Origin: Octopus bimaculoides
Taxonomy: Eukaryota
Assembly: GCF_001194135.2 (NCBI RefSeq)
Contig: NC_068982.1
Coordinates: 107,733,123 to 107,772,285 of the forward strand
Length of the DNA stretch: 39,163 bases
Reading direction: 5' to 3'
Numbering within the stretch: position 1 is the stretch's first letter; each line of letters opens with the position of its first letter. This document shows, piece by piece, positions 3,273-32,389 of this stretch. Below the pieces are notes generated by a model. The model had not been told where the DNA came from and ran no database searches. It saw only the letters and a program-made list of their open reading frames with translations. A program made the translations under genes and the position numbers.

Positions 3273-32389
<29,117 letters not shown>

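What the first reader, a model, noticed from the sequence alone, without database searches (positions are those of the whole stretch)
17713..17727. Candidate 15-nt in-frame microexon (NSDGK) between switch II and the relay helix of non-muscle myosin II
Seen on the - strand: ...ttttttttgccttctactctgctgcag|AACTCTGATGGGAAG|gtaacc. It sits in the phase-0 9.8-kb intron, so inclusion would give [20 protein letters not shown] with no stop. No other AG occurs for 108 nt upstream (17730-17837). Three UGC motifs lie within ~20 nt of the 3' splice site, and a UGCAUG (17605-17610) lies ~100 nt downstream. Established: Srrm4/eMIC-type neural microexons have proximal UGC motifs, downstream UGCAUG binds Rbfox and promotes inclusion, and known NMII inserts (B1/C1, B2/C2) are in loops 1 and 2. 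Inference: a tissue-specific, possibly neural, NMII isoform with an insert at a site whose length is normally invariant. It could alter coupling of the nucleotide pocket to the lever arm. I know of no described insert here.
Basis: partly seen in the sequence, partly recalled or inferred. Interest (0 to 1): 0.75.

Follow-up and report, generated by a model that had tools for sequence, protein, structure and literature searches.

The report
Conserved microexon in octopus non-muscle myosin
The 15-base stretch is a real, alternatively used mini-exon of the octopus non-muscle myosin II gene that adds five amino acids (NSDGK) at the core of the motor; it is conserved in cuttlefish and has counterparts in clams, mussels, oysters and sea slugs, yet no paper I could find describes it.

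Summary
Window 17713-17727 (minus strand) reads cag|AACTCTGATGGGAAG|gtaacc inside a 9,847-nt phase-0 intron of the Octopus bimaculoides non-muscle myosin II gene.

Sequence alone is not decisive: 23% of shuffled introns give an equally good candidate. Outside evidence is strong.
- RefSeq isoforms X1, X3 and X5 of O. bimaculoides and of O. sinensis carry [20 protein letters not shown]; X2, X4 and X6 lack it.
- The only significant similarity between the whole octopus intron and the 13.3-kb cuttlefish intron is a 90-nt block centred on the exon. There it reads SSDGK, with 14/15 bases identical, the same three UGC motifs and the same 5' splice site.
- Mussel (RAEGK), oyster (SSEGK), ark clam (RDGQQ), Aplysia (SKDK), Lymnaea and scallop have 12-30-nt cassette exons at the same site.
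- The spacing at this site is otherwise fixed in 149 of 150 myosin II cluster representatives.

A downstream GCAUG lies within 130 nt in 5 of 7 species. The long AG-free zone and the UGC motifs fit Rbfox- and eMIC-type control. Neural specificity and the kinetic effect remain untested.

I rate it a new variant of a known kind: an annotated but apparently undescribed third splice site in the NMII motor.

The parts
22958..23110 (-). Upstream constitutive exon (153 nt) encoding [51 protein letters not shown]. It contains switch II (DIAGFE) and ends on a complete codon (AAG|gtaaaaga).
   Evidence: ORF list; exact spliced mapping of RefSeq isoform X1 onto the genome; Myosin_head Pfam match at positions 327-379.
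17728..22957 (-). Upstream intron segment when the microexon is included (5,230 nt). It holds a decayed mariner/Mos1-type transposon.
17700..17789 (-). The 90-nt block conserved between octopus and cuttlefish (79% identity). It is the only significant match between the two whole introns and is centred on the microexon. It includes CUGA(A/U)AU at 17777-17783, a possible branch-point region (inference).
   Evidence: blastn of the full 9,847-nt intron against the full 13,308-nt cuttlefish intron gave a single hit, E = 3.6e-14; MAFFT alignment A2.
17730..17837 (-). AG-exclusion zone of 108 nt upstream of the acceptor, the longest in this gene.
   Evidence: other exons: median 33, maximum 102; 76 nt in cuttlefish.
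17730..17747 (-). Three UGC motifs at -20, -8 and -5 within the pyrimidine tract and acceptor (uuUGCcuucuacucUGCUGCag). The acceptor itself is weak.
   Evidence: identical positions in cuttlefish; acceptor PWM score 5.3 against a gene mean of 12.1 and minimum of 6.8.
17713..17727 (-). The 15-nt cassette microexon AACTCTGATGGGAAG, encoding NSDGK, phase 0 on both sides.
   Evidence: present in XP_052834538/40/42 (O. bimaculoides X1, X3, X5) and XP_029648429/47/64 (O. sinensis X1, X3, X5); 14/15 nt identical in cuttlefish.
17704..17712 (-). 5' splice site gtaaccaac. Its strength is average for this gene. GTAACCAA is shared with cuttlefish and mussel.
   Evidence: PWM score 9.0 against a mean of 9.0; octopus and Mytilus match at 13/15 positions across -6..+9; cuttlefish.
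17605..17610 (-). UGCAUG (Rbfox-type element), 103 nt downstream of the 5' splice site.
   Evidence: (U)GCAUG lies at +75 in cuttlefish, +43 in mussel, +54 in oyster, +125 in Aplysia and +258 in Lymnaea; enrichment statistics.
13111..17712 (-). Downstream intron segment when the microexon is included (4,602 nt).
12940..13110 (-). [quoted passage not shown]
   Evidence: Pfam Myosin_head positions 377-436; helix 493-523 in the AF2 model.

Best explanation
Window 17713-17727 (-) is a genuine, evolutionarily old cassette microexon of the Octopus bimaculoides non-muscle myosin II (NMII) heavy-chain gene.

Shown:
- The exon is spliced in or left out. Combined with three loop-1 variants, this gives RefSeq isoforms X1-X6.
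- Inclusion inserts NSDGK between the last residue after switch II (…DIAGFEIFK) and the residues that open the relay helix (MNSFEQ…).
- The exon, its acceptor with three UGC motifs and its donor GUAACCAA are conserved in cuttlefish.
- Cassette exons at the same position, sharing an [S/A/R]-[D/E]-G core, exist in bivalves and gastropods. The exon therefore probably dates to early molluscs.

Inferred regulation:
- Inclusion needs help, because the acceptor is weak and sits behind a long AG-free zone.
- The help most likely comes from an Rbfox-family protein bound to the downstream (U)GCAUG.
- In cephalopods, an SRRM/eMIC-type activator may also read the UGC motifs next to the 3' splice site.
- That combination would predict enrichment in neurons, and possibly in muscle.

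Inferred protein effect:
- The five residues form a short extra loop that lengthens the covalent link between switch II and the relay helix.
- The motor fold stays intact.
- Communication between the gamma-phosphate sensor and the relay/converter would change, giving altered hydrolysis or phosphate-release kinetics or altered load dependence. This would be a kinetically distinct NMII isoform.
For: Existence:
- The search with the insert-bearing query returned XP_052834540.1 at 100% identity and coverage.
- NSDGK is in O. bimaculoides X1, X3, X5 and O. sinensis X1, X3, X5 and absent from X2, X4, X6. The two species' proteins are 98% identical, so the models are independent sequences.
- Exact spliced mapping of X1 uses 17727-17713 with AG/GT borders.

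Conservation:
- Cuttlefish L015:32927-32941 reads ttgctttttactttgctgcag|AGCTCTGATGGGAAG|gtaaccaa (SSDGK). It is the only significant match between the two whole introns.
- Cassette exons lie in the homologous phase-0 intron of Mytilus (CGGGCAGAAGGCAAG|gtaaccaat), Saccostrea (TCAAGTGAGGGCAAG), Ylistrum, Aplysia (12 nt) and Lymnaea (30 nt).
- In each of Dreissena, Ruditapes, Mercenaria, Ylistrum, Mytilus and Saccostrea, RefSeq holds isoforms both with and without an insert.
- A full-length RNA-seq contig from an ark clam carries RDGQQ.
- Every insert length is a multiple of 3.

Site invariance elsewhere:
- 149 of 150 myosin II 50%-identity cluster representatives have the standard spacing.
- So do all 208 mid-length and short fragments in which both landmarks could be read.
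- All solved myosin II structures shown are 5-6 residues shorter over the aligned stretch; the three printed alignments place a 5-residue gap exactly at the insert.

Regulation:
- Weak acceptor, average donor and the longest AG-free zone in the gene.
- Three UGC against 0-1 for the other exons, at identical positions in cuttlefish.
- GCAUG lies within 130 nt downstream in 5 of 7 species (P about 5e-4) and within 300 nt in 6 of 7 (P about 0.002), measured against each intron's own density. None lies within 300 nt upstream.
- eMIC-dependent exons are described as having long AG exclusion zones, UGC near the 3' splice site and CU-rich tracts (10.1101/2021.02.24.432780).
- The vertebrate NMII-B N30 and NMII-A A2 exons are neural and Rbfox/UGCAUG-dependent (PMC3082911; PMC13158602).

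Protein:
- The AF2 model built with a 60-sequence alignment has pLDDT 84.8 and pTM 0.81.
- Strand 470-476 and relay helix 493-523 are kept. The block holding the insert has pLDDT 61, against 87 and 89 for its neighbours.
- The model superposes on smooth-muscle myosin motors 5m05 and 5t45 at 1.4-1.5 Å.
Against: - No read-level or tissue-level expression data were reachable. RefSeq isoforms are automatic models, and I could not see their RNA-seq support.
- No assembled octopus transcript fragment with NSDGK was found in the protein collection.
- The cuttlefish gene models and two full-length cuttlefish RNA-seq contigs lack the exon, so inclusion there is unproven.
- Listed isoforms of Biomphalaria, Babylonia and Mya have no insert.
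- The UGC cluster is confined to cephalopods. Mytilus, Ylistrum and Lymnaea have none and Aplysia and Saccostrea one. An eMIC-type mechanism, if real, is therefore not the ancestral one.
- The GCAUG window was chosen after seeing the data, and the species are not independent.
- Searches of the octopus genome with Pfam SRRM_C and Fox-1_C found nothing. This is uninformative rather than negative, because neither rang anywhere, including the 14 control genomes.
- UGCU and UGCC are also YGCY motifs (Muscleblind), and the tract has PTB-like UCUU/CUUCU. These are my own readings of the sequence.
- The structural effect rests on one AF2 model with only moderate confidence at the insert. No coordinates were available to measure exposure.
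Confidence: 0.7

Rival explanations
1. The exon is real and conserved, but its inclusion is not neural. It could be constitutive at a low level, developmental, or specific to muscle or another tissue, and controlled by Rbfox in muscle, by Muscleblind (YGCY) or by PTB, rather than by an SRRM/eMIC neural programme.
For: - Only cis motifs are available and no tissue data.
- The UGC cluster is absent outside cephalopods.
- UGCU and UGCC also fit YGCY, and the pyrimidine tract has UCUU/CUUCU (my reading of the sequence).
- Rbfox proteins are regulators of tissue-specific splicing in general (PMC2777236). That they act in muscle as well as neurons is my own knowledge.
- In Aplysia, 8 of 11 RefSeq isoforms carry the insert, and in Dreissena, Ruditapes and Mercenaria about two thirds do. 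That hints at broad rather than rare use.
Against: - The architecture in octopus and cuttlefish is a weak acceptor, a long AG-free zone, UGC within 20 nt of the 3' splice site and a size of 27 nt or less. That is the combination reported for eMIC-dependent neural exons in flies and mammals.
- The known vertebrate NMII cassette exons N30 and A2 are brain-specific.
Confidence: 0.3
2. Inclusion does not tune the motor but disables it. Lengthening the switch II-relay link uncouples ATP hydrolysis from lever movement. The result would be a slow or non-motile, actin-binding, tension-holding NMII, like the vertebrate B2 and A2 isoforms.
For: - The site has fixed length in 149 of 150 myosin II cluster representatives and in all solved structures listed, which suggests strong constraint.
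- NMIIA2 is described as an inactive mechanoenzyme in the abstract of PMC13158602.
Against: - AF2 keeps switch II, the strand and the relay helix in register and treats the insert as an extra loop.
- Insert length varies from 4 to 11 residues between molluscs. That is easier to reconcile with a tolerated surface loop than with a precise disabling device.
- There is no biochemical evidence either way.
Confidence: 0.2
3. The exon is splicing noise or an annotation artefact: a cryptic AG…GT pair that gene-prediction pipelines pick up, with no function.
For: - Sequence statistics alone are weak: 23% of shuffled introns give an equally good candidate.
- RefSeq isoforms are built combinatorially.
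- No octopus transcript fragment with NSDGK was found in the collection.
Against: - The exon and its splice sites are the only conserved island in a 10-13-kb intron between octopus and cuttlefish.
- The same position carries frame-preserving cassette exons in at least ten further mollusc taxa, annotated from independent genomes.
- Octopus NSDGK, cuttlefish SSDGK, oyster SSEGK and mussel RAEGK share the core and the donor sequence.
- An ark-clam RNA-seq assembly carries the included form as its full-length contig.
Confidence: 0.04

Closest known systems
Vertebrate NMII motor-domain cassette exons: loop-1 inserts A1/B1 (N30)/C1 and loop-2 inserts A2/B2/C2 of MYH9/10/14
   Same: - They are short frame-preserving cassette exons in the NMII motor domain that create kinetically distinct isoforms.
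- N30 (30 nt) and A2 (63 nt) are neural or brain-specific and activated through UGCAUG/Rbfox (PMC3082911; PMC13158602; PMC11335295).
- The octopus gene also has its own loop-1 alternatives.
   Different: - The octopus exon lies neither in loop 1 nor in loop 2. It lies between switch II and the relay helix, a site the review does not list.
- That site has fixed length in the vertebrate, arthropod and other myosin II proteins examined.
- The exons are not homologous.
- The N30 enhancer is 1.5 kb downstream; here the motif is 43-125 nt downstream in five of the seven species.
Muscle myosin heavy chain mutually exclusive exon cluster-7 (Drosophila Mhc exon 9a/b/c, the relay domain)
   Same: - Alternative splicing changes the element that carries the switch II movement to the converter (PMC3912159).
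- The variable part starts at this same exon boundary. Insect Mhc models that concatenate several copies of that exon matched the query region repeatedly.
   Different: - There, whole relay exons of equal length are swapped in a muscle gene.
- Here a 4-11-residue piece is added in front of a single, invariant relay exon of the non-muscle gene.
- No second copy of the relay or switch II exon exists in the window.
SRRM4/Srrm234-eMIC-dependent neural microexons
   Same: - Size of 27 nt or less, frame-preserving, in a structured domain.
- Weak acceptor, long AG-exclusion zone, UGC motifs within about 20 nt of the 3' splice site and a CU-rich tract (compared).
   Different: - Dependence on an eMIC protein and neural inclusion are untested.
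- The UGC cluster is conserved only within cephalopods.
- One search reports that eMIC exon programmes are almost completely rewired between phyla. This exon position is shared across three mollusc classes.
Smooth-muscle myosin SM-B seven-residue loop-1 insert
   Same: A very short alternatively spliced insert in a myosin II head that confers functional differences between tissues (title of a reference in PMC11335295).
   Different: It is a surface-loop site near the nucleotide pocket entrance, not the switch II-relay link, and it is found in vertebrates only.

Membership tests
Alternatively spliced cassette microexon (3-27 nt) | Length of 27 nt or less, with canonical AG and GT borders | tested here: met
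   15 nt, cag|…|gtaacc
Alternatively spliced cassette microexon (3-27 nt) | Transcripts exist both with and without it, and the frame is preserved | tested here: met
   RefSeq X1, X3, X5 carry it and X2, X4, X6 lack it, in two Octopus species. It is phase 0 and a multiple of 3. Caveat: these are automatic models, and I did not inspect reads.
Alternatively spliced cassette microexon (3-27 nt) | Conservation of the exon and its splice sites in related species | tested here: met
   Cuttlefish matches at 14/15 nt and the block is the only conserved island in the intron. Exons at the same position occur in bivalves and gastropods.
SRRM4/eMIC-dependent neural microexon | [quoted passage not shown] | tested here: met
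   UGC at -20, -8 and -5; AG-free zone of 108 nt (76 nt in cuttlefish). Criteria as described in 10.1101/2021.02.24.432780.
SRRM4/eMIC-dependent neural microexon | Neural-specific inclusion | not testable with these tools
   No tissue RNA-seq was reachable. Fragment searches found no octopus transcripts with the insert.
SRRM4/eMIC-dependent neural microexon | Inclusion depends on an eMIC-bearing Srrm234 protein, and such a gene is present in the genome | tested here: inconclusive
   The Pfam SRRM_C search of the octopus genome gave no hit and did not ring anywhere, including the 14 control genomes. Dependence itself needs an experiment.
Rbfox-activated exon | (U)GCAUG in the downstream intron near the exon | tested here: met
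   UGCAUG at +103
Rbfox-activated exon | The motif is conserved across species | tested here: met
   Within 130 nt downstream in 5 of 7 molluscs (P about 5e-4) and within 300 nt in 6 of 7. None lies within 300 nt upstream. The window was chosen after seeing the data.
Rbfox-activated exon | Rbfox binding and dependence; Rbfox gene present in the genome | tested here: inconclusive
   The Pfam Fox-1_C search of the genome gave no hit and rang nowhere. Binding needs an experiment.
NMII loop-1 / loop-2 inserts (B1, C1, B2, C2 type) | The insert lies in surface loop 1 (before [12 protein letters not shown]) or in loop 2 | tested here: not met
   The insert lies between DIAGFEIFK and MNSFEQ. The gene's separate loop-1 alternatives are different exons.
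Mutually exclusive relay exons (Mhc cluster-7) | Two or more similar, equal-length copies of the relay exon in tandem | tested here: not met
   tblastn of the relay and switch II exon peptides against the window found only the single copies; all other hits had E > 0.9.

The most novel reading that the evidence does not exclude
Molluscs have kept, since before cephalopods, bivalves and gastropods diverged, a regulated microexon that lengthens the covalent link between switch II and the relay helix of non-muscle myosin II. In cephalopod neurons it would be switched on by Rbfox together with an eMIC-type factor. The result would be a motor with altered chemo-mechanical coupling, for example slowed phosphate release or a strongly tension-holding state. 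That would make it a third, mechanistically different way of diversifying NMII, besides loops 1 and 2. It would also be a rare case of a microexon position shared across classes within a phylum.
Probability: 0.3. Interest if true: 0.75.

Novelty: new variant of a known kind. Interest (0 to 1): 0.62.

Why it matters
Switch II and the relay helix form the core pathway that turns ATP hydrolysis into lever-arm movement. Nearly all natural and engineered variation studied so far lies in surface loops, or in whole relay-exon swaps in muscle myosins.

Here is a natural, alternatively spliced insertion of 4-11 residues exactly at the joint between these two elements. It is conserved in cephalopods and shared in position, and partly in sequence, with bivalves and gastropods. 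It offers a ready-made experiment on how tight that joint must be.

It also gives a concrete, testable case of microexon regulation in the cephalopod nervous system, with conserved UGC and UGCAUG elements. It parallels the neural N30/B1 exon of vertebrate NMII-B at a different site.

Practically, the cuttlefish annotation misses the exon, and other cephalopod annotations may too.

Tried and rejected
1. Sequence-only significance. PWM scoring of all 215 candidates ranks the exon first, but 23% of shuffles do as well. It is not decisive, so I relied on comparative evidence.
2. The top 48 hits of the first protein search were insect muscle Mhc models with several concatenated relay exons. They are artefacts of multi-copy scoring and not relevant.
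3. Searches for mid-length (264-824 aa) and short (83-262 aa) protein fragments carrying NSDGK found none.
4. DNA for the O. sinensis and Argonauta orthologues could not be fetched, because the gene ranges exceed 100 kb. Aplysia X4, Ylistrum X4 and Saccostrea cucullata X1 were not on record. The longest isoforms of other species or models were used instead.
5. Single-sequence AlphaFold gave a useless model with pLDDT 33. It was redone with a 60-sequence alignment. A first 98-sequence alignment failed internally.
6. Pfam SRRM_C and Fox-1_C searches of the octopus genome were empty and rang nowhere, so they are uninformative.
7. The mutually exclusive exon hypothesis was rejected, because there is no duplicate relay or switch II exon.
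8. Literature searches for a described insert at this site found nothing. The Torres-Méndez 2019 eMIC paper is not in the searchable library.
9. My spliced mapper produced one spurious 2-nt exon near window 55.5 kb, outside the window. I ignored it.

Full report
**What is in the window.** The window is G000:C2:107733123-107772285 of a 2.34-Gb assembly. RefSeq proteins of Octopus bimaculoides sit on a contig of the same length as C2, 192,492,730 bp. The minus strand carries the motor-domain part of the non-muscle myosin II (NMII) heavy-chain gene. The gene spans at least C2:107,706,957-107,802,312.

I mapped RefSeq isoform X1 exactly onto 109 kb of genome. The exon 23110-22958 ends …DIAGFEIFK (switch II). 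The exon 13110-12940 begins [11 protein letters not shown]… (relay helix). Between them lies a 9,847-nt phase-0 intron. The 15-nt exon 17727-17713 sits inside it with the borders ctgctgcag|AACTCTGATGGGAAG|gtaaccaa.
- the 108-nt AG-free stretch;
- three UGC motifs at -20, -8 and -5;
- UGCAUG at 17605-17610, which is +103.

**Is it more than chance?** The sequence alone does not settle this. The intron contains 215 open, in-frame AG…GT candidates of 3-30 nt. With splice-site matrices trained on the gene's other 36 introns, this one ranks first. Yet 23% of shuffled introns give at least one equally good candidate.

The acceptor scores 5.3, below every constitutive acceptor of the gene (mean 12.1, minimum 6.8). 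The donor is average (9.0). Two features are unusual:
- The 108-nt AG-exclusion zone is the longest in the gene, against a median of 33.
- Three UGC in the last 30 nt occur at 0.5% of AG sites. None of the other 38 exon acceptors mapped for isoform X1 has more than one.

**Direct evidence that the exon is used.** I built a query that joined the window's exons with NSDGK inserted. It returned 'myosin heavy chain, non-muscle isoform X3 [Octopus bimaculoides]' (XP_052834540.1) at 100% identity over the region.

Within its 90% cluster, O. bimaculoides X1, X3, X5 and O. sinensis X1, X3, X5 read [20 protein letters not shown], while X2, X4, X6 read [15 protein letters not shown]. The two species' X1 proteins differ at 41 of 1,986 residues, so these are independent sequences.

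The six isoforms are the product of two choices. One is the presence or absence of NSDGK. The other is a set of three loop-1 variants: none, SKELNL, or GVVSEESVTSMIYMKK. The loop-1 exons lie just upstream of the window. These are automatic RefSeq models, and I could not inspect their read support.

**Conservation in cephalopods.** The cuttlefish (Acanthosepion pharaonis) orthologue could be fetched as L015. Its homologous phase-0 intron is 13,308 nt. It contains ttgctttttactttgctgcag|AGCTCTGATGGGAAG|gtaaccaaa at L015:32927-32941, encoding SSDGK.

I compared the complete octopus intron with the complete cuttlefish intron. The single significant match is a 90-nt block (window 17789-17700, 79% identity, E = 3.6e-14) centred on the exon (alignment). 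The cuttlefish shares these features:
- 14 of 15 exon bases;
- the donor GTAACCAA;
- all three UGC motifs at the same offsets (-20, -8, -5);
- a long AG-free zone (76 nt);
- a UGCAUG downstream, at +75.

The cuttlefish gene models and two full-length RNA-seq contigs lack the exon. It is therefore unannotated there, and its use in cuttlefish is not yet shown.

**Conservation across molluscs.** Inserts at exactly this site appear in RefSeq isoforms or gene models of many species:

| Species | Insert |
|---|---|
| Aplysia | SKDK |
| Lymnaea | PRDGSKRWKA |
| Ylistrum | PSDVGSGEAP |
| Mytilus | RAEGK and RAEGKVTNAP |
| Saccostrea | SSEGK |
| Dreissena | AHLMGSGEKVR |
| Ruditapes | AWTFPFGSITC |
| Mercenaria | VWPFHPGTVMR |

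Every species in the table except Lymnaea (a single model) also has insert-free isoforms. A full-length RNA-seq contig (Logan, SRR22671416) from an ark clam, 94% identical to Tegillarca, carries RDGQQ.

In the five genomes I could read, the insert is a cassette exon of 12-30 nt with AG/GT borders in the homologous phase-0 intron.

Octopus AAC TCT GAT GGG AAG|gtaaccaac, mussel CGG GCA GAA GGC AAG|gtaaccaat and oyster TCA AGT GAG GGC AAG|gtaaat line up codon for codon. Octopus and mussel match at 13 of 15 positions around the donor. The mussel long form simply reads through this donor to a second GT 15 nt further on.

An [S/A/R]-[D/E]-G core recurs in octopus, cuttlefish, oyster, mussel, ark clam and Lymnaea; the scallop (SDVG) and Aplysia (KD-K) inserts only partly fit. 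I take this as homology of the short exon across classes. From my own knowledge of divergence times, that places the exon in early molluscs. The veneroid 11-residue inserts are too different to judge.

No insert was seen in listed isoforms of Biomphalaria, Babylonia or Mya. Nothing outside molluscs showed one, but non-mollusc lophotrochozoans were not sampled by name.

**The site is otherwise fixed.**
- Among the 150 best 50%-identity cluster representatives of myosin II, 149 have the standard spacing between DIAGFE and FEQ. One of those is shown by a second switch II copy in a model (P0370) that runs into unrelated sequence after the first. The exception has two extra residues.
- All 110 mid-length and 98 short fragments in which both landmarks could be read have the standard spacing.
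- All solved myosin II structures shown are 5-6 residues shorter than the octopus peptide over the aligned stretch. The three printed alignments place a 5-residue gap exactly at the insert.
- A 2024 review of NM2 lists motor-domain splicing only in loops 1 and 2 (PMC11335295).
- I found no paper describing an insert here.

**How it is probably regulated (inference).** A weak acceptor behind a long AG-free zone needs an activator. Two kinds of element are conserved.

The first is (U)GCAUG downstream. It lies at +103 in octopus, +75 in cuttlefish, +43 in mussel, +54 in oyster, +125 in Aplysia and +258 in Lymnaea, and is absent from the first 300 nt in scallop. No species has one within 300 nt upstream.
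- Against each intron's own GCAUG density, 5 of 7 within 130 nt has P about 5e-4, and 6 of 7 within 300 nt has P about 0.002.
- The caveats are that the window was chosen afterwards and that the species are related. The motif positions differ between species, though.

The second is the UGC triplet next to the acceptor, found in cephalopods only. Together with the AG-free zone and the CU-rich tract, it matches the architecture reported for eMIC-dependent neural microexons in flies and mammals (10.1101/2021.02.24.432780).

The closest precedents are in NMII itself. The 30-nt N30 exon of MYH10 is neural and is activated by Fox proteins through UGCAUG (PMC3082911). The brain-specific A2 exon of MYH9 is also Rbfox-controlled (PMC13158602). 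These parallels make neuron-enriched inclusion the most likely pattern. Tissue data were out of reach, and Muscleblind or PTB control, or muscle expression, cannot be excluded.

**What it probably does to the protein (inference).** I ran AlphaFold2 on residues 1-818 of isoform X3 with a 60-sequence alignment. The model is confident overall (pLDDT 84.8, pTM 0.81).
- The strand leading into switch II (470-476) and the relay helix (493-523) are in their usual places.
- The ten-residue block that holds NSDGK drops to pLDDT 61, between neighbours at 87 and 89.
- The model superposes on smooth-muscle myosin motor domains at 1.4-1.5 Å.

The insert is therefore best read as an extra short loop that lengthens the covalent link between the gamma-phosphate sensor and the relay helix. 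In muscle myosins the relay is itself the target of alternative splicing. That is the mutually exclusive exon cluster-7 (Drosophila exon 9), which starts at this same exon boundary (PMC3912159). The octopus gene has no such duplicate exons.

I therefore expect a kinetic change: in hydrolysis or the recovery stroke, in phosphate release, or in load dependence. A near-dead, tension-holding motor like B2 or A2 is the main alternative. Neither has been tested.

**Verdict.** The exon is already present in automatic annotation, so it is not a new discovery for the databases. I found no paper describing it as a third, conserved splice site of the NMII motor, located at the switch II-relay joint and shared across molluscs. 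I rate it a new variant of a known kind, of moderate to high interest.

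Noticed in passing
L005:2547-2564 and L005:2362-2409 (minus strand; about 2.4-2.6 kb beyond the high end of the window, would-be window coordinates 41710-41727 and 41525-41572): There are two further alternative exons of the same gene in loop 1, immediately before [12 protein letters not shown]. 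One is 18 nt (SKELNL) and one is 48 nt (GVVSEESVTSMIYMKK), about 140 nt apart. No listed isoform combines them. This is the same site as the vertebrate B1/C1 inserts. Neither has UGC motifs at its acceptor.
   Followed up: partly
L015:32927-32941 (Acanthosepion pharaonis): The cuttlefish orthologue has an unannotated copy of the microexon (AGCTCTGATGGGAAG, SSDGK) with conserved splice sites. The three deposited gene models and two RNA-seq contigs lack it.
   Followed up: yes
L012:23150-23179 (Mytilus edulis): The mussel microexon has two donors 15 nt apart, giving RAEGK or RAEGKVTNAP. The extension reads through the same GTAACCAA(T/C) that serves as the donor in octopus. Octopus also has a GT at +15 (ctg|gttttc), but it looks weak and no isoform uses it.
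   Followed up: partly
window 21223-22341 (minus strand): A decayed mariner/Mos1-type transposon lies in the upstream half of the intron. Its ORF fragments match Pfam HTH_48 (E = 1.3e-7) and Transposase_1 (E = 4.5e-13).
   Followed up: partly
window 24115-24116 (minus strand): The intron after exon 24235-24117 starts with GC (GAACAG|gcaagtta). It is the only GC-AG intron among the roughly 38 mapped in this gene.
   Followed up: no
window 2716-3057, 3769-4704 and 30890-31014: Three runs of N (assembly gaps of 342, 936 and 125 nt) lie inside introns of the gene.
   Followed up: no
window 24250-24530: A GA/TC-rich simple repeat gives long spurious RERERK and LSLSLS ORFs on both strands.
   Followed up: no
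protein P0337 (734 aa, unnamed cluster representative): It is the only myosin II representative of 150 with a length change at the site ([22 protein letters not shown], two extra residues). It could be real or a gene-model error.
   Followed up: no
G000:C29:8096300-8171911 (+): A second myosin II gene, probably the muscle heavy chain, has an intron at the same position between Pfam Myosin_head positions 379 and 377. That intron is only about 570 nt long (8127981 to 8128555).
   Followed up: no
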